This document shows, piece by piece, positions 7,201-11,129 of a DNA stretch of 64,000 nt; position 1 is the stretch's first letter; every line of letters starts with the position of its first letter. The notes under the pieces were generated by a model. The model ran no database searches and was not told the origin of the DNA. It was given only the letters and a program-made list of their open reading frames with translations. The DNA lies in the IMG/VR virus record IMGVR_UViG_3300028558_000791, positions 248,001-312,000 of that record, one strand, 5' to 3'. Made by a program: the position numbers and the translations under genes.

Positions 7201-7345
7201 TCTGGGCATAGCCTGATATCTTTGCAATATAGGCGACTTTTATTGGAAAACATATCAATAAACGAGTATGCTTTATGAATTTTGTAAGTTTAGGTGTAAG
7301 TAACCGTGCCTTAAAGGGCATTTGAAGATTAAATAGGAAACAACA

Positions 7346-8092
7346 ATGTCTCTAAAACTATTACAACCAGGCTGCCAGCCTTTGGGCCAATTTGATGGTG
7401 TCGATTCCGAAGTTCTCACCTTCAAGGGTGGAGAAGTTTGCACCTTTGCTTATGTAACTACTTCCGGTCAACCAGGCGTAACTACTCCAGGTCTTGATCA
7501 AAGCGCATACGATGGATTTGATGGCTACATCAATGCATCTGGTGTTTTGAAGCGTCCAGCTATCACTAAGACTTTTGCTGCAACCAGCATGACTAAGCGT
7601 CCATTGATGTTAGCAGACGATGGTATCACTGGATACGGTACTCTATTCGGCTCTGTAGTCGGTGGAACTATCGGTCAACAGGTCAACGGACCAAACACCT
7701 TCACTGGTGCAATCCTTGGACCACACACTGCAACCGGCTCTGGCAAGATGACTTGCTGGGATAAGCCAGGTCTCTACGCTGTCTCCCTAGACGCAGTAGA
7801 TACTACCGCTTCTACTGGTTTGCAACCAACCAACACTTCTCTAGTCGGTGGCGATCCACTTGGATTCACTATCGCTGGATTGCTAACCCCATCCGCAACT
7901 GGTTCTCCAGTAACTAACGGTGGTGTTGCAGTTAACGTTGGTCACTTAGTAGAGTTCAACACCAACGGTTCTTTGGTAACCACTCCAAACTACTTAGTTG
8001 CAGCTTTGAACAGCCCATCTGGTAACGTCTCTTCGCAACAGCCAAGAGTCTTCCAGTTCGCAACCATCTACTTTGCACCACAAAGTAACTAA
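7346..8092 (+). CDS. Capsid decoration/cement protein
   Basis: 248 aa, Gly/Thr-rich beta-type composition, immediately upstream of the MCP, SD AGGA. Confidence 0.6.
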   Translation: MSLKLLQPGCQPLGQFDGVDSEVLTFKGGEVCTFAYVTTSGQPGVTTPGLDQSAYDGFDGYINASGVLKRPAITKTFAATSMTKRPLMLADDGITGYGTLFGSVVGGTIGQQVNGPNTFTGAILGPHTATGSGKMTCWDKPGLYAVSLDAVDTTASTGLQPTNTSLVGGDPLGFTIAGLLTPSATGSPVTNGGVAVNVGHLVEFNTNGSLVTTPNYLVAALNSPSGNVSSQQPRVFQFATIYFAPQSN

Positions 8093-8116
8093 TTAGTTGA
8101 ATAAACTTCTCTGGCC

Positions 8117-8165
8117 GGGAGGCTGGGGGAGACGGAAGTCTCGAAGTCCGCAAGGATTCCTCCCA
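8117..8165 (+). promoter_or_regulatory. Structured RNA element (three-way junction with two GNRA hairpins) in the MCP 5' leader
   Basis: GGGAGG 8117-8122 pairs with CCTCCC 8159-8164, enclosing GAGAC-GGAA-GTCTC and AGTCC-GCAA-GGATT. It is a GC-rich island in AT-rich DNA. Confidence 0.65.
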
Positions 8166-8222
8166 TCTTTTAATGTAAGTAACTCTAGCTGGTAGAACTG
8201 GCAAATTTTTCTAGGAGAAACT

Positions 8223-9236
8223 ATGAATATGTTTAGCGGTAAAGGCGAAATTAACGCCTCATCTTTCAAGGATGCATTGCAAGCCTTGGTAAAGTACGCA
8301 GCCATTCTCGAAGAGAATGTCCCTGCAAACCAAGGACTAGCTGGTCAACCAGCATTGAGCGATGAGAAGCGTGATGAATTGATCACTCGCGCCATCATGA
8401 CTCAAGACGGAAAGATCGCCCTAGCCCAGGCCATGGCGAACCCAATCCGTAGAAACCTCGATTACCATGGTATCGCTCGTCGTGCCTTGGTTGTTGATCC
8501 ACTACCACAGGGAGCAATTCCAACTTACGATAGAGATATCGACGTTGCCGCTGTTGTTATCTCTTCCAACGGTACTGGTCCAGAGTCTCGTGTCTTCGGT
8601 GACCGTGTCGTTGTTCCAGAATTCGAAATTTACGCGAACCCAACTGTTCGTATCGCTGAAGTCAAGCGTCGTAGATTTAACGTAATTGACCGTGCTGTTC
8701 AAAAGGCACGTCAAGAAATCATGGCTCAGGAAGATGCAAACATCTTCGCAGCCCTTGATGCAGCAGCTTCAGTTGAGAACACTCTCACTGACATCGCAGA
8801 CGCTGGTCTTCTAAAGAGAGACCTCGTTGAAATCAAGCAGCAAATTGATCGTTGGGACTTAGTAACTACTAAGTATTTTATGAACATTAACGAGTTCACT
8901 GACATCCTCAAGTGGGGTTCTGGTGGTGGACAAGGTGTTGGTGGTGGTGACTTCGACCCAGTAACTATGAGAGAAGTTCTACAAACCGGTCTTTACGCCC
9001 ACATCTGGGGTACTGACATCATGGTAAGCAAGATCGTTCCACCTGGAACCATCTACGGTGTAGCTGACCCAGAGTTCGTTGGTGTAATGCCAATCCGTCA
9101 GGACATCGAAGTTCTACCAGCGGACGAGCCAAAGCAATTGAAGCTCGGTTGGGTAGTCTCTGAGATCATCGGTATCGCTATCGTCAACCCACGTGGTTGC
9201 GCAGCCGGCCGTAAGTCTGTTGTAATCGGCGCCTAA
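8223..9236 (+). CDS. Major capsid protein (HK97 fold)
   Basis: 337 aa, SD AGGAG, followed by a terminator. HK97-like features: RRALVVDPLPQG, E-loop region GPESRV, backbone helix IDRAVQKARQEIMAQEDANIF, P-domain end GWVVSEIIGIAIVNP. Confidence 0.85.
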   Translation: MNMFSGKGEINASSFKDALQALVKYAAILEENVPANQGLAGQPALSDEKRDELITRAIMTQDGKIALAQAMANPIRRNLDYHGIARRALVVDPLPQGAIPTYDRDIDVAAVVISSNGTGPESRVFGDRVVVPEFEIYANPTVRIAEVKRRRFNVIDRAVQKARQEIMAQEDANIFAALDAAASVENTLTDIADAGLLKRDLVEIKQQIDRWDLVTTKYFMNINEFTDILKWGSGGGQGVGGGDFDPVTMREVLQTGLYAHIWGTDIMVSKIVPPGTIYGVADPEFVGVMPIRQDIEVLPADEPKQLKLGWVVSEIIGIAIVNPRGCAAGRKSVVIGA

Positions 9237-9262: not shown

Positions 9263-9298
9263 GAGCCTCTAGAGAAATCTAGGGGCTCTTTCATTTTC
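9263..9298 (+). terminator. Intrinsic terminator after the MCP
   Basis: GAGCCTCTAGA-GAAA-TCTAGGGGCTC stem-loop followed by TTTCATTTT. Confidence 0.85.
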
Positions 9299-9310
9299 TG
9301 GCATATAGAT

Positions 9311-9862
9311 ATGGACCCGAAGAAACTTCGAAAACAATACATGCATCTCATGCCTCGTTTGAACAAGGCTATGCAACATGTGCAGTCTCAGCTTGCAGAT
9401 TTGCCACCACATGATTTTCTGTTGGAAACCAACTTAAAGCCATACCTAACTATCAAGAAGAAAATGCTACAAGGATACGATTCCGATCCGAGCGGTTTAC
9501 CTGATTTGGCTAGAGGTAGGCTTTTTTATTCTCAAGACTATAATCCTAAAGAAGTTCTAGATTTACTTAAGAAGGTATTTCCTAACCAAGTCAAAGGGGT
9601 TAAGAAAAAAGATACTAACGATTGTGGATTAGAATATCCTGGAGTAACTGATGTTAATCTAGATGTTGATGGAATTCAATTTGAATTACAATTGATGCCA
9701 TTAGAGTACAAAGATTCGCAAGATTTATCTCATCAAATCTATGAGCAATTACGTAATGATAAAGATAAGCTTTCTGATAAACAGAAAGAGTTCCTAAAGA
9801 GCACGCACAATAAACTCTTTAAGGCTCTAGATGTAAAGTCCAAGGCCCTAAAGAACGATTAA
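9311..9862 (+). CDS. RelA/SpoT-family small alarmone-synthetase-like nucleotidyltransferase (divergent)
   Basis: Ordered SYNTH-like motifs: NLKPYLTIKKK (cf. RxKxxxSxxxK), DLARGR, YPGVTDVNL, FELQL, HQIYEQLR. Confidence 0.7.
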   Translation: MDPKKLRKQYMHLMPRLNKAMQHVQSQLADLPPHDFLLETNLKPYLTIKKKMLQGYDSDPSGLPDLARGRLFYSQDYNPKEVLDLLKKVFPNQVKGVKKKDTNDCGLEYPGVTDVNLDVDGIQFELQLMPLEYKDSQDLSHQIYEQLRNDKDKLSDKQKEFLKSTHNKLFKALDVKSKALKND

Positions 9863-11094
9863 TTGCGTCGAGCTACTTCTAATAAATGAGACTTGGTATT
9901 GTTCTCTGGATGACGAAGAATCTCCAAGTAACATTCATCCAAAGCCTTTTTGATTCGAGGACCAGGTGTCATACCAGCCGTCAACAGATCATCTCCGTTG
10001 ATGGCCATTTCCTTTCGGGATAGGACAACCTGTTCTCGGTATTCGTCCAGTAGTGCTCCAGATGCCAATCCCATGGGCTCAGTCAAGTGTAAAAATTGAC
10101 GGAGCGTATCTTCCCAAGGGTCGGGGCTATGGTTCTTCAAGACCGCCATAAAGCTCTTGTAAGCTAAAGTAGTATTCTTCTCTTCGAACTCATGGAACCT
10201 CTCAACTAATTGTAAAAGAAATGCAACCTTCTTAATCTCCTTATTGGAAAACTTTAGGTTGATAAGTTCCTCTTGAACCTGTTGAGGTGGAAGCCTGTTG
10301 TACAAGAATGCTAGCCTGGTTTCCAAGGTACCAACACATCGATCCTGTTCTACCAGTAGTGGTAATTGCCTTCCTGCCAGAAGCGGGCAAGCAACGTCCA
10401 AAGCCCCCGAATCCCTTAGGATTTGCAGACCATATGAAGCATTAGCACTCATTAGCGTCTTGCTAAGCTCGTCACTAATGCGTTCCTTGGAAACCTTCTT
10501 CAAAGTCTCAAGGCTTTGCTTCATACCTTCGAAAGTGGCCAGATCAACGGTATAACCGAAGCGTGCAGCAAAACGAGCAACTCGCATAATGCGAAGTCCG
10601 TCCTCTCGAAAGCGAATCAATGGGTCACCAACTGCCTTGATCAAATTCTCCTTGAGATGTTGAGTCCCGTTGAATGGGTCAACAAATCTATGAGTAAGCG
10701 GATCATAAGCAATGGCATTGATGGTAAGGTCTCGGCGAGCCAAGTCTTGGGCTACGTCCATGACAAAGAAAACTTCATCGGGCCTTCGTCCATCAGAGTA
10801 TTCTCCCTCGATTCTAAACGTAGTAACTTCAAAGTGGTTTTCGACACCTTCGCCCATAACAACCGTGACCGTACCATGTTGTAGGCCGGTTGGGATGTTC
10901 TTTTGGAAAATTTCCATTACTTTCTTGGGGCTAGCGTCTGTGGTAATATCCCAGTCCTTGGGCTTCTGCCCCAGGAGTAAGTCTCGCACACATCCGCCCA
11001 CAATAAAGGCTTGATATTCGTGTTCATGTAGGATACGACATACCTCCACCGCTAAAGGGTGGATGAGATGCGTAGAAATAGGTCGGTGTTCCAT
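9859..11094 (-). CDS. cca: Class II tRNA nucleotidyltransferase (CCA-adding enzyme family)
   Basis: Motifs VGGCVRD..KDWD, EVTTFR, DLARRDLTINA, EDGLRIMR. No HD domain. ATG 11094 is preferred over the track GTG at 11103 because the GTG overlaps the -10 box. Confidence 0.9.
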   Translation of the reverse strand: MEHRPISTHLIHPLAVEVCRILHEHEYQAFIVGGCVRDLLLGQKPKDWDITTDASPKKVMEIFQKNIPTGLQHGTVTVVMGEGVENHFEVTTFRIEGEYSDGRRPDEVFFVMDVAQDLARRDLTINAIAYDPLTHRFVDPFNGTQHLKENLIKAVGDPLIRFREDGLRIMRVARFAARFGYTVDLATFEGMKQSLETLKKVSKERISDELSKTLMSANASYGLQILRDSGALDVACPLLAGRQLPLLVEQDRCVGTLETRLAFLYNRLPPQQVQEELINLKFSNKEIKKVAFLLQLVERFHEFEEKNTTLAYKSFMAVLKNHSPDPWEDTLRQFLHLTEPMGLASGALLDEYREQVVLSRKEMAINGDDLLTAGMTPGPRIKKALDECYLEILRHPENNTKSHLLEVARRN

Positions 11095-11101
11095 GTCATC
11101 C

Positions 11102-11129
11102 ACTCTAAAACTTAAAAATTACGTGTCAA
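11102..11129 (-). promoter_or_regulatory. Sigma70-type promoter for cca
   Basis: Minus strand TTGACA (11129-11124), 16 nt, TAGAGT (11107-11102), then 7 nt to ATG. Confidence 0.6.

What the first reader, a model, noticed from the sequence alone, without database searches (positions are those of the whole stretch)
8105..8222. Structured RNA in the major capsid protein leader
Seen: a GC-rich three-way junction (GGGAGG/CCTCCC) with two GNRA-tetraloop hairpins (GAGAC-GGAA-GTCTC, AGTCC-GCAA-GGATT). A weaker GCTGGT/ACTGGC hairpin follows, flanked by CTAG copies, one abutting the SD. It lacks the simple hairpin-plus-U-tract form of the two real terminators. Inference: a cis-regulatory RNA (stabiliser, processing signal or autoregulatory protein-binding site) that sets MCP:decoration stoichiometry, possibly an uncatalogued motif.
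Basis: partly seen in the sequence, partly recalled or inferred. Interest (0 to 1): 0.6.

Follow-up and report, generated by a model that had tools for sequence, protein, structure and literature searches.

The report
Pseudoknotted RNA leader before phage capsid gene
The 130 bases between a jumbo phage's capsid-cement gene and its major capsid gene encode a real, evolutionarily maintained RNA structure (a pseudoknotted three-way junction, a fixed-length open linker and a universally conserved small hairpin) that is in no RNA catalogue searched and most likely marks the boundary and controls the stability of the capsid message, though its function is untested.

Summary
In 30 distinct related leaders, the GGGAGG/CCTCCC stem is paired in 100% of cells with compensatory changes in 4-5 of 6 pairs, and both inner hairpins covary.

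- **A fourth helix.** P1 (8109-8114 with 8123-8128) also covaries and crosses the junction stem. The element is therefore an H-type pseudoknot, or a two-state fold, rather than a plain three-way junction.
- **The 'weaker' hairpin is the core.** The hairpin at 8188-8204 occurs in 91 of 100 distinct capsid-gene leaders. Its base (G-C, C-G, U.G, then AA) is invariant and its upper stem covaries.

Other findings:
- Both elements are single-copy in the 480-kb genome.
- Neither reaches threshold for any Rfam family. A weak freshwater-2 match is a coincidence.
- Relatives without the pseudoknot carry a canonical terminator, a promoter and a 5' hairpin at the same position.
- Metatranscriptome contigs bridge the cement gene, the spacer and the capsid gene.

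Best reading (inferred, about 0.4): an intercistronic boundary and stability module of a bicistronic cement-capsid mRNA. Rivals are a leaky terminator, a protein operator and a switch.

It is a new RNA family of a known kind, and the function is untested.

The parts
7346..8092 (+). Upstream gene, 248 aa, probable capsid cement/decoration protein. Its stop codon TAA is at 8090-8092.
   Evidence: ORF list. No Pfam or PHROG family. By language-model features it resembles viral clusters that carry Phage_cement, Phage_cement_3 or XM1_gp53_minor_capsid (score 0.95, a lead only). No similarity to phage G decoration protein gp26.
8109..8114 (+). P1 5' arm (CTCTGG). It begins 17 nt after the stop codon.
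   Evidence: Pairs with 8123-8128. 93-94% of cells are paired and 5-6 of 6 pairs change on both sides. P1 was not modelled as pairs in R1, so alignment A2 is not biased towards it.
8115..8116 (+). Conserved CC linker. It is loop 1 of the pseudoknot, or the two inner pairs of an extended P1.
   Evidence: At least 90% conserved. Alignment column 16 pairs with column 23 in 27 of 30 sequences, whereas column 23 always pairs with its S2 partner, column 81.
8117..8122 (+).
   Evidence: Pairs with 8159-8164 in 100% of cells. Pair types seen include GAGAGG/CCTCTC, GAGTGG/CCACTC, GAGGGG/CCCCTC and GGAAGG/CCTTCC.
8123..8128 (+). P1 3' arm (CTGGGG). P1 crosses S2.
   Evidence: RNAalifold selects P1 extended by the CC:GG pairs as the nested consensus.
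8129..8142 (+). P2 hairpin (GAGAC-GGAA-GTCTC).
   Evidence: 89-96% paired, with 3 of 4 pairs changing on both sides. Length varies, with 13-15 nt insertions in some relatives. P2 is absent in L077/L080, so it is dispensable.
8146..8157 (+). P3 hairpin (GTCC-GCAA-GGAT). It is preceded by the conserved AA at 8144-8145.
   Evidence: 2-3 of 3 modelled pairs change on both sides. Loops vary: GCAA, GAAA, UUCG and 6-8 nt loops.
8159..8164 (+). S2 3' arm (CCTCCC).
8165..8187 (+). Unstructured linker: a pyrimidine/U-rich tract (ATCTTTTAA, 8165-8173) followed by TGTAAGTAAC (8174-8183).
   Evidence: The two T residues are at least 90% conserved. The linker is 22-24 nt long in 27 of 31 class-1 leaders. 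GTAAG is present in 18 of 31 and a UAAG-like motif in 28 of 31. No structure is predicted (MFE -0.3 against -0.44 for shuffles). The same 10-mer lies in the cement-gene leader.
8188..8204 (+). Hairpin C (GCTGGT-AGA-ACTGGC, then AA), the universal core of the capsid-gene leader.
   Evidence: Found by a strict pattern in 91 of 100 distinct leaders; the other 9 have a variant hairpin at the same place. In 86 distinct sequences: 98.6% paired, G-C and C-G invariant, U.G in 85 of 86, upper pairs covary (24 cells changed on both sides against 4.6 in shuffles), loop 3-10 nt and not conserved. Single significant copy in the genome.
8205..8225 (+). A/U-rich spacer, SD GGAG (8214-8217) and start codon ATG (8223-8225).
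   Evidence: Sequence. The TTC(C/T) and GGAG motifs are conserved in the alignment listings.
8223..9236 (+). Major capsid protein gene, 337 aa.
   Evidence: phrog_2522 major head protein, E = 2.9e-81. Weak DNA match to the Bacillus phage G major head protein gene.
9263..9288 (+). Canonical intrinsic terminator after the capsid gene (11-bp stem followed by a T-rich tail).
   Evidence: Scan and sequence.
7243..7321 (+). Leader of the cement gene, and probable start of the bicistronic transcript. It holds a sigma-70-like TTGGAA-N18-TATGCT, tandem TGTAAGT motifs (7283-7289 and 7295-7301) and a covarying hairpin (7306-7321).
   Evidence: Sequence. The region is conserved in 82 distinct relatives: 81 have GTAAG, 78 have it in tandem, and 74 have a hairpin directly after it. 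The promoter is assigned by eye; it matches 8 of 12 consensus positions and falls below the scan's cut-off.

Best explanation
The spacer encodes a three-part RNA unit on the mRNA-sense strand.
1. A pseudoknotted three-way junction of about 56 nt, starting 17 nt after the cement gene's stop codon. P1 is 6 bp, then a conserved CC, then S2 of 6 bp closing hairpins P2 and P3.
2. An open linker of 22-24 nt, U/A-rich, carrying a UAAG motif.
3. Hairpin C, with an invariant G-C/C-G/U.G base followed by AA. An A/U-rich stretch and a strong SD follow it.

Proposed mechanism: in this phage the cement and capsid genes are transcribed as one mRNA, and the unit acts as an intercistronic boundary and stability module. 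The mRNA is cut in the open linker, or a fraction of polymerases stop at its U-tract. The compact pseudoknot then caps the 3' end of the cement message against 3' exonucleases. Hairpin C becomes the 5'-proximal structure of the capsid message. There it slows 5'-end-dependent decay and keeps the A/U-rich ribosome-binding region unpaired. The two messages then decay independently, which sets their ratio.

Shown: the four helices and hairpin C are under selection, sit on the sense strand, are specific to this gene junction, and are transcribed across.

Inferred: simultaneous formation of P1 and S2 (the pseudoknot), the cut, the protection, and any effect on stoichiometry.
For: Structure:
- Covariation supports S2, P1, P2 and P3 in 30 distinct leaders.
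- Covariation supports hairpin C in 86 distinct leaders.
- The wobble pairs are compatible only with the sense strand.
- The loop lengths suit an H-type pseudoknot: L1 = 2 nt, L2 = 0, L3 at least 25 nt.
- The nested three-way junction alone is on average 4.6 kcal/mol worse than extended P1 plus P2 and P3. S2 nevertheless always pairs, as expected if P1 (about -4.7 kcal/mol) forms together with it.

Specificity: both elements are single-copy in the 480,838-bp genome, and every R1 hit in relatives lies just upstream of the capsid gene.

Positional equivalence:
- In relatives without the pseudoknot, and in those with an inserted gene, the cement gene ends in a canonical terminator.
- In those relatives the capsid leader has a -10-like hexamer (TATTCA or TATTTA) 5-6 nt before a hairpin B.
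- Hairpin B abuts hairpin C in 74% of 65 leaders (MFE -5.8 against -1.6 for shuffles).
- Those phages therefore make, by termination and initiation, the same RNA ends that this model proposes for the window.

Other support:
- No comparable promoter is found between the cement stop codon and hairpin C in the window.
- Metatranscriptome contigs from two RNA runs bridge the cement gene, the spacer and the capsid gene: X19 record 1, 7937-8254, depth 484; X20 record 10, 7919-8629.
- The linker is unstructured and of nearly constant length.
- Precedent: intergenic processing sites flanked by stem-loops set subunit ratios of protein complexes (PMC4423207; PMC5927463).
Against: - No 5' or 3' RNA ends could be mapped. 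Only assembled contigs were available, and these can contain DNA and cannot show ends.
- A simple hairpin would protect a 3' end as well, so the model does not explain why a pseudoknot with a conserved CC and AA is kept.
- It also does not explain why the base of hairpin C is sequence-invariant. That invariance suggests a specific binding partner.
- The host and its RNases are unknown. Relatives are binned with Bacteroidota and Ca. Berkiella MAGs.
- Cement and capsid proteins are often needed in about equal numbers, so a ratio-setting device is not obviously required.
- In the hybrid leader L041/L180 the pseudoknot is followed by further hairpins rather than by the linker and hairpin C.
Confidence: 0.4

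Rival explanations
1. Leaky, branched intrinsic terminator (attenuator). S2 followed by the U-rich tract stops a fixed share of polymerases after the cement gene. The fast-forming extended P1 hairpin sequesters the 5' strand of S2 and so acts as a built-in anti-terminator that sets the read-through level.
For: - S2 is GC-rich and is followed by ATCTTTTA (5 T in 8). The two T residues are at least 90% conserved.
- The element occupies the position of the canonical terminator in class-2 and insertion loci.
- Extended P1 overlaps S2 by two pairs and is energetically preferred over the nested junction.
Against: - The stem closes a branched interior of 36 nt or more, and 3-4 non-U bases (often ACCC) separate the stem from the U run in many relatives.
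- RNA-run contigs read through it.
- The hybrid L041/L180 keeps the pseudoknot without a U-tract.
- No promoter is seen downstream, so termination here would starve the most needed gene.
- The constant 22-24 nt spacing to hairpin C is not explained.
Confidence: 0.2
2. Binding site for a phage or host protein that controls translation or stability of the capsid message. Candidates are autoregulation by a capsid, cement or scaffold protein, or a dedicated RNA-binding regulator or nuclease. The protein would recognise the invariant base of hairpin C plus the linker motif, with the pseudoknot as a second contact.
For: - G-C, C-G, U.G (85 of 86) and the 3' AA of hairpin C are invariant while neighbouring sequence turns over completely.
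- The pseudoknot-to-hairpin spacing is constant.
- A UAAG/GTAAG motif followed by a hairpin also occurs, in tandem, in the cement-gene leader of 78 of 82 relatives. This suggests a shared factor for the two capsid genes.
Against: - The loops of hairpin C, P2 and P3 are not conserved, unlike known operator hairpins.
- Hairpin C lies 11-25 nt upstream of the SD, so it would not occlude the SD directly.
- Class 2 and class 3 leaders lack the GTAAG motif.
Confidence: 0.2
3. Ligand- or condition-sensing switch (riboswitch or thermosensor) that toggles between extended P1 and S2.
For: Two overlapping helices both covary. The nested states differ by only 0-7 kcal/mol.
Against: - Few unpaired positions are conserved (CC, AA).
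- P2 varies by 15 nt and can be lost entirely.
- No Rfam riboswitch match even at E up to 10.
- A pseudoknot explains both helices without any switching.
Confidence: 0.05

Closest known systems
Selective RNA processing and stabilisation in operons for protein complexes (cip-cel cellulosome operon of Clostridium cellulolyticum, PMC4423207; genome-wide differential operon decay, PMC5927463). From my own knowledge also papBA, pufBA and cggR-gapA.
   Same: Structured elements lie between cistrons that encode subunits of one assembly. An open segment is flanked by stable structures. The proposed outcome is independent decay of the two halves of one transcript.
   Different: Those systems use plain stem-loops, and their processing sites have been mapped. 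Here the upstream structure is a covarying pseudoknotted junction, the downstream hairpin has an invariant base, and no processing site has been mapped.
Phage T7 gene 10 (major capsid) leader: a 5' stem-loop, then an A/U-rich translational enhancer, then a strong SD (from my own knowledge; not retrieved here).
   Same: The leader of a major capsid gene has a small stable hairpin followed by an A/U-rich stretch and a strong SD. In class-2 relatives, hairpins B and C start at the predicted transcription start.
   Different: There is no sequence relation. In T7 the hairpin is at a primary 5' end made by T7 RNA polymerase. In the window, hairpin C is internal to a probable bicistronic RNA.
Rfam RF02980 freshwater-2 RNA (cis-regulatory candidate).
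   Same: It has tandem hairpins directly upstream of an A-rich SD and a start codon. It gave the best, though weak, Rfam match: 21.7 bits at 8152-8229. I found it to be common on viral contigs.
   Different: - The score is far below the gathering cut-off of 49.9.
- In freshwater-2 the loop UAGAAC is conserved and the stems vary. In hairpin C the stem base is invariant and the loop varies.
- Its downstream genes start MGRPL... and are unrelated to this capsid protein.
Rho-independent terminators.
   Same: A GC-rich helix is followed by a U-rich tract at the end of a gene, at the same position as true terminators in relatives.
   Different: The interior is branched and pseudoknotted, the U-tract is short and offset, and RNA contigs read through it.
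H-type pseudoknots of viral RNAs, such as frameshift and read-through stimulators and exonuclease-resistant RNAs (from my own knowledge).
   Same: Two crossing helices, a 2-nt loop 1, no loop 2, and conserved C and A residues in the loops.
   Different: The element lies 17 nt after a stop codon, and stops follow in all frames, so it is not a recoding signal. Exonuclease resistance is untested.

Membership tests
Rfam RF02980 freshwater-2 | Covariance-model score at or above the gathering cut-off (49.9 bits) | tested here: not met
   21.7 bits, E = 0.46, in a 501-nt search. No hit at gathering in the window or in 20 related loci. No hit at E up to 5 in 10 related loci.
Rfam RF02980 freshwater-2 | Conserved UAGAAC loop in the third hairpin, and the same downstream gene family | tested here: not met
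   The window has UAGAAC by chance. Relatives mostly have UAAGAC, UAAAAC or longer loops. Genes downstream of freshwater-2 start MGRPL..., and BLASTP finds no similarity to the capsid protein.
Any other Rfam 15 family | Match at the gathering score | tested here: not met
   0 matches in the 64-kb window.
H-type RNA pseudoknot | Two helices whose strands interleave, each supported by covariation | tested here: met
   P1 (columns 9-14 with 23-28) and S2 (columns 17-22 with 80-85) cross. They are 93% and 100% paired, with 6 and 4 pairs changing on both sides.
H-type RNA pseudoknot | Both helices form at the same time, with sterically adequate loops | tested here: inconclusive
   Loop lengths of 2, 0 and at least 25 nt are compatible. 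Energies favour it only if P1 adds to S2. Simultaneity needs structure probing.
Rho-independent terminator | Uninterrupted GC-rich hairpin with a short loop, immediately followed by a U-tract | tested here: not met
   Not called by the scan. The stem encloses a branched region of 36 nt or more. The tract ATCTTTTA is present but short.
Rho-independent terminator | Transcripts end at the U-tract | tested here: inconclusive
   RNA-run contigs read through, but contigs cannot show ends or partial termination.
Riboswitch | Highly conserved unpaired core nucleotides and a fixed architecture | tested here: not met
   Only CC, AA and the T residues are conserved among unpaired positions. P2 varies by 15 nt and is absent in L077/L080.
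Intercistronic processing/stabiliser element (SRPS type) | Lies within a polycistronic transcript, between stable structures | tested here: met
   Flanking structures. Bridging RNA contigs: (weak evidence, since DNA carry-over is possible). No internal promoter or canonical terminator was found.
Intercistronic processing/stabiliser element (SRPS type) | A mapped processing site and different half-lives of the two halves | not testable with these tools
   Only Logan contigs of RNA runs were available.
Translational operator hairpin (MS2, T4 gp43 or gp32 type) | Conserved loop or bulge recognised by the protein, with overlap of the RBS | tested here: not met
   The loop of hairpin C is 3-10 nt long and variable. 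The hairpin ends 11-25 nt before the SD.
Sigma-54 promoter (considered for CTGGCAA-N-TTCC) | GG and GC elements 10 bp apart in TGGCAC-N5-TTGC | tested here: not met
   The spacing is one base short, and the -12 element reads CC or CT. Covariation of the two arms indicates a helix instead.

The most novel reading that the evidence does not exclude
The pseudoknotted junction is a self-sufficient mechanical barrier to exoribonucleases, a phage counterpart of the exonuclease-resistant RNAs of eukaryotic viruses. Alternatively, together with the fixed-length linker and the invariant hairpin base, it is the docking site of a dedicated phage factor that co-regulates the cement and capsid genes through the shared UAAG-plus-hairpin signature.
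Probability: 0.12. Interest if true: 0.8.

Novelty: new member of a known kind. Interest (0 to 1): 0.5.

Why it matters
If the model holds, a widespread clade of soil and freshwater jumbo phages controls its most abundant structural protein with a compact RNA device. Evolution can swap that device for a terminator-promoter pair. That would be a natural experiment on how operon boundaries are encoded in RNA. It would also supply a portable part for insulating or stabilising cistrons.

The family is well suited to experiment. It is short (about 115 nt), has rich natural covariation, and has three interchangeable leader designs in front of a nearly identical capsid gene.

It also adds a well-supported motif to the largely uncurated pool of phage RNA structures.

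Tried and rejected
- **Single-sequence thermodynamics.** Not informative: z is about -0.5.
- **Rfam.** Nothing at gathering in the window or in 20 relatives. The weak freshwater-2 match was followed up with a pattern scan of viral contigs and rejected.
- **Recoding signal (frameshift or read-through).** Rejected. The element starts 17 nt after the stop codon, and further stops follow in all frames.
- **tRNA-like element.** ARAGORN finds nothing in the window.
- **Sigma-54 or other promoter reading of hairpin C.** Rejected on spacing and on covariation.
- **General late-gene motif.** Rejected. The pattern and both covariance models find one copy in 480 kb.
- **Promoter inside the spacer.** None is convincing. 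AATAAAC after the stop codon resembles the spacer of the cement promoter but has no -10 hexamer after it. TGTAAG-type motifs are enriched in intergenic DNA (9 of 21), but several of those are SD contexts.
- **GNRA loops and CTAG copies as features.** Not conserved.
- **SD sequestration by the CCTCCC arm** (seen in the MFE fold). The complementarity is not conserved, since relatives have CCACTC and similar.
- **Bacillus phage G as a cultured model.** Its decoration and capsid genes are only 25 nt apart, with no leader.
- **The 2023 catalogue of about 10,000 candidate phage RNAs (PMC10690425).** Overlap could not be checked because no supplementary tables are held.
- **Host assignment.** MAG bins disagree: Bacteroidia, Chitinophagales and Ca. 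Berkiella.
- **Not used.** The large protein searches, structure prediction and complex prediction, because no claim here rests on them.

Full report
**Context**

The window is bases 248,001-312,000 of a 480,838-bp IMG/VR phage record. It is 43% G+C and about 90% coding by a crude ORF call. The finding lies in the 130-nt spacer between two genes:
- A 248-aa ORF (7346-8092). It has no Pfam or PHROG family. By language-model features it resembles viral clusters carrying Phage_cement domains (a lead only).
- The major capsid protein gene (8223-9236; phrog_2522, E = 2.9e-81).

A canonical terminator follows the capsid gene at 9263-9288. The closest cultured relative by DNA is Bacillus phage G. There the decoration and capsid genes are only 25 nt apart, so it has no such leader.

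**Checking the observation**

On the single sequence they are not distinguishable from chance. The minimum-energy fold is no better than shuffles (z = -0.58 and -0.49). The energy model prefers three tandem hairpins to the three-way junction.

I therefore collected relatives through the capsid protein:
- 80 loci from viral contigs, and a few more with a distant query.
- 80 from metagenomes.
- 3 from MAGs.

The capsid protein is 79-100% identical across these loci and the upstream protein only 45-88%. The spacer is very diverse, with about 100 distinct leaders.

**Three leader designs**

- **Class 1** (the window and 30 other distinct leaders): the GC-rich element, then a U-rich tract, a short linker and the small hairpin.
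- **Class 2**: a canonical terminator after the upstream gene, an A/T-rich stretch with a -10-like hexamer (TATTCA or TATTTA) preceded by a conserved GGTAATAA-type motif, a hairpin B starting 5-6 nt after that hexamer, then the small hairpin.
- **Class 3**: a long hairpin A, then hairpin B, then the small hairpin.

One lineage (L041/L180) has the class-1 element followed by hairpins A and B and the small hairpin. Where an extra gene has been inserted between the two genes (gaps of 838-2458 nt), the upstream gene ends in a canonical terminator. On a tree of the capsid gene the classes interleave. Class 1 needs at least 9 changes forced by well-supported branches. The leaders are therefore exchanged or replaced often. 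My class labels in that tree are crude; for example, L005 and L035 are really class 1.

**The GC-rich element**

In 30 distinct class-1 sequences (MAFFT alignment A1, and A2 aligned to model R1):

| Helix | Window position | Cells paired | Pairs changed on both sides |
|---|---|---|---|
| P2 | 8129-8142 | 89-96% | 3 of 4 |
| P3 | 8146-8157 | 86-88% | 2-3 of 3 |

S2 pair types include GAGAGG/CCTCTC, GAGTGG/CCACTC, GAGGGG/CCCCTC and GGAAGG/CCTTCC.

Over all 19 pairs, 81 cells carry a change on both sides, against about 23 in column shuffles (0 of 500 shuffles reach this). Sliding the 3' partners by 1-3 columns drops pairing from 94-95% to 40-58%. P1 was not modelled as pairs in R1, so its support in A2 is not circular.

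P1 and S2 interleave, so together they form an H-type pseudoknot. The loops are a conserved CC (8115-8116) as loop 1, no loop 2, and P2 plus P3 as loop 3.

Alternatively, P1 can extend by two pairs (CC with the last GG of S2) into a hairpin that excludes S2. RNAalifold, which cannot draw pseudoknots, chooses that form. Where the last S2 position is A rather than G, its S2 partner always compensates (all 5 such sequences in A1). Its extended-P1 partner compensates in only 2 of those 5. S2 is thus the stronger constraint.

Nested energies favour extended P1 over the junction by 4.6 +/- 2.5 kcal/mol. A 6-bp P1 adds about -4.7 kcal/mol. S2 would therefore be expected to form together with P1. Simultaneity is an inference.

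The GNRA loops are not conserved, P2 takes insertions of 13-15 nt, and P2 is missing in L077/L080. Conserved unpaired bases are CC, an AA between P2 and P3, and two T residues in the tract after S2.

**The small hairpin (hairpin C, 8188-8204)**

A strict pattern finds it in 91 of 100 distinct leaders of all classes. The remaining nine have a different hairpin at the same place. In 86 distinct sequences:
- 98.6% of cells are paired.
- The two basal pairs (G-C, C-G) never change. This is partly imposed by my pattern.
- The third pair is U.G in 85 of 86.
- The upper three pairs covary: G.U/G-C/A-U, G-C/A-U and U-A/C-G/U.G, with 24 cells changed on both sides against 4.6 in shuffles.
- The loop ranges from 3 to 10 nt and is not conserved.

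The wobble pairs here and in P1 would be mismatches on the other strand, so the structure belongs to the mRNA sense.

**Specificity**

The hairpin pattern, model R1 (74 bits) and model R2 (33 bits; the next best is 14.5 bits at E > 1) each find exactly one copy in the 480-kb genome. All R1 hits in relatives lie just upstream of the capsid gene. It is therefore not a general promoter, terminator or repeat.

**The linker**

Between S2 and hairpin C lies a stretch with no predicted structure. It is 22-24 nt long in 27 of 31 class-1 leaders. It starts with a C/U-rich run ending in TTT(T)AA and usually holds GTAAG or TAAGT. The window's TGTAAGTAAC (8174-8183) recurs in the leader of the cement gene. 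There, tandem TGTAAGT motifs are followed by a covarying hairpin and the SD. This arrangement is conserved in 78-81 of 82 distinct relatives.

**Transcription**

The cement gene has a sigma-70-like promoter by eye (7243-7272), and its sequence is conserved in relatives. I could not find a credible promoter between the cement stop codon and hairpin C. Contigs assembled from two soil metatranscriptome runs span the end of the cement gene, the whole spacer and the start of the capsid gene. Those contigs come from relatives with a class-1 leader. This fits a bicistronic mRNA. However, contigs cannot show ends or strand, and they can include DNA.

**Interpretation**

The structural conclusions are firm. 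The functional ones are inferred.

The strongest clue is positional equivalence. Class-2 phages end the cement message with a terminator hairpin and start the capsid message at hairpins B and C. Class-1 phages have, in the same order, a very stable pseudoknot, an open fixed-length linker, and hairpin C.

I therefore favour an intercistronic boundary and stability module (0.4). The RNA would be cut, or partly terminated, in the linker. The pseudoknot would protect the upstream 3' end, and hairpin C would protect and organise the capsid message's 5' region. This corresponds to the selective RNA processing and stabilisation described for operons of protein complexes (PMC4423207, PMC5927463). It also recalls the hairpin, A/U-rich stretch and SD layout of the T7 capsid-gene leader (from my own knowledge).

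The rivals are:
- A leaky branched terminator with extended P1 as a built-in anti-terminator (0.2).
- A protein-binding site (0.2). The invariant hairpin base, the constant spacing and the motif shared with the cement leader argue for a specific partner.
- A sensing switch (0.05).

**Comparison with known families**

No Rfam family matches. The weak freshwater-2 hit (21.7 against 49.9 bits) rests on the SD region and a loop that happens to read UAGAAC in the window only. Freshwater-2 RNAs, which I found on at least 120 viral contigs, precede unrelated genes. A 2023 catalogue of about 10,000 candidate phage RNAs from IMG/VR may contain this element, but its tables were not available.

**Verdict**

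This is a genuine, covariation-supported and previously uncurated RNA family of a known general kind (a cis-acting structured leader or intercistronic element). Its pseudoknotted architecture is unusual, and its function is untested.

Noticed in passing
window 7243-7345: The cement-like gene has its own conserved leader. It holds a sigma-70-like TTGGAA-N18-TATGCT, tandem TGTAAGT motifs 12 nt apart (the second reads TGTAAGTAAC, as in the capsid leader), a covarying hairpin (7306-7321) and an AGGAAA SD. Of 82 distinct relatives, 81 have GTAAG, 78 have it in tandem, and 74 have a hairpin directly after it.
   Followed up: partly
L241-L320 (viral contigs), e.g. L245:1633-1665: A pattern taken from the Rfam freshwater-2 consensus hits at least 120 IMG/VR viral contigs. 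The ORF that follows always begins MGRPL(N/K)..., is 129-468 aa long and has no Pfam family. One has a weak phrog_460 'head closure' match. The motif therefore appears to be phage-borne.
   Followed up: partly
L014, L019, L020, L030, L038, L044, L057, L060, L066, L069, L071, L075 (between the cement gene and the MCP gene): Extra DNA of 838-2458 nt is inserted between the two capsid genes. It often holds a reverse-strand gene whose N-terminus looks like that of a homing endonuclease by eye (not tested). In these loci the cement gene ends in a canonical terminator.
   Followed up: no
L041:1-154 / L180: A hybrid leader: the class-1 pseudoknot without a U-tract, followed by the class-3 long hairpin A, hairpin B and hairpin C. 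This shows that the modules can be combined.
   Followed up: partly
genome positions 49385 and 169043 (outside the window): Near-consensus sigma-70 promoters (TTGACA-N17-TATAAT/TATATT) with the same TATCAATAA/TGGCAATAA spacer motif. tRNA-like sequence follows them.
   Followed up: no
window 9859-11103 (-): A class II CCA-adding or poly(A) polymerase-type nucleotidyltransferase: PolyA_pol head domain (E = 1e-36), its RNA-binding domain and tRNA_NucTran2_2. It lies two genes downstream of the capsid gene, on the opposite strand.
   Followed up: no
L361, L362, L363: Capsid-gene relatives sit on contigs binned into MAGs of Bacteroidia, Chitinophagales and Candidatus Berkiella. The bins disagree, so the host of the clade remains unknown.
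   Followed up: no
window 8223-9236, in RNA runs X19-X23: The capsid gene of this clade is represented by many contigs in four soil metatranscriptome runs. The summed contig depth in X19 is about 600-1600 across the gene. This suggests active infections in soil.
   Followed up: partly
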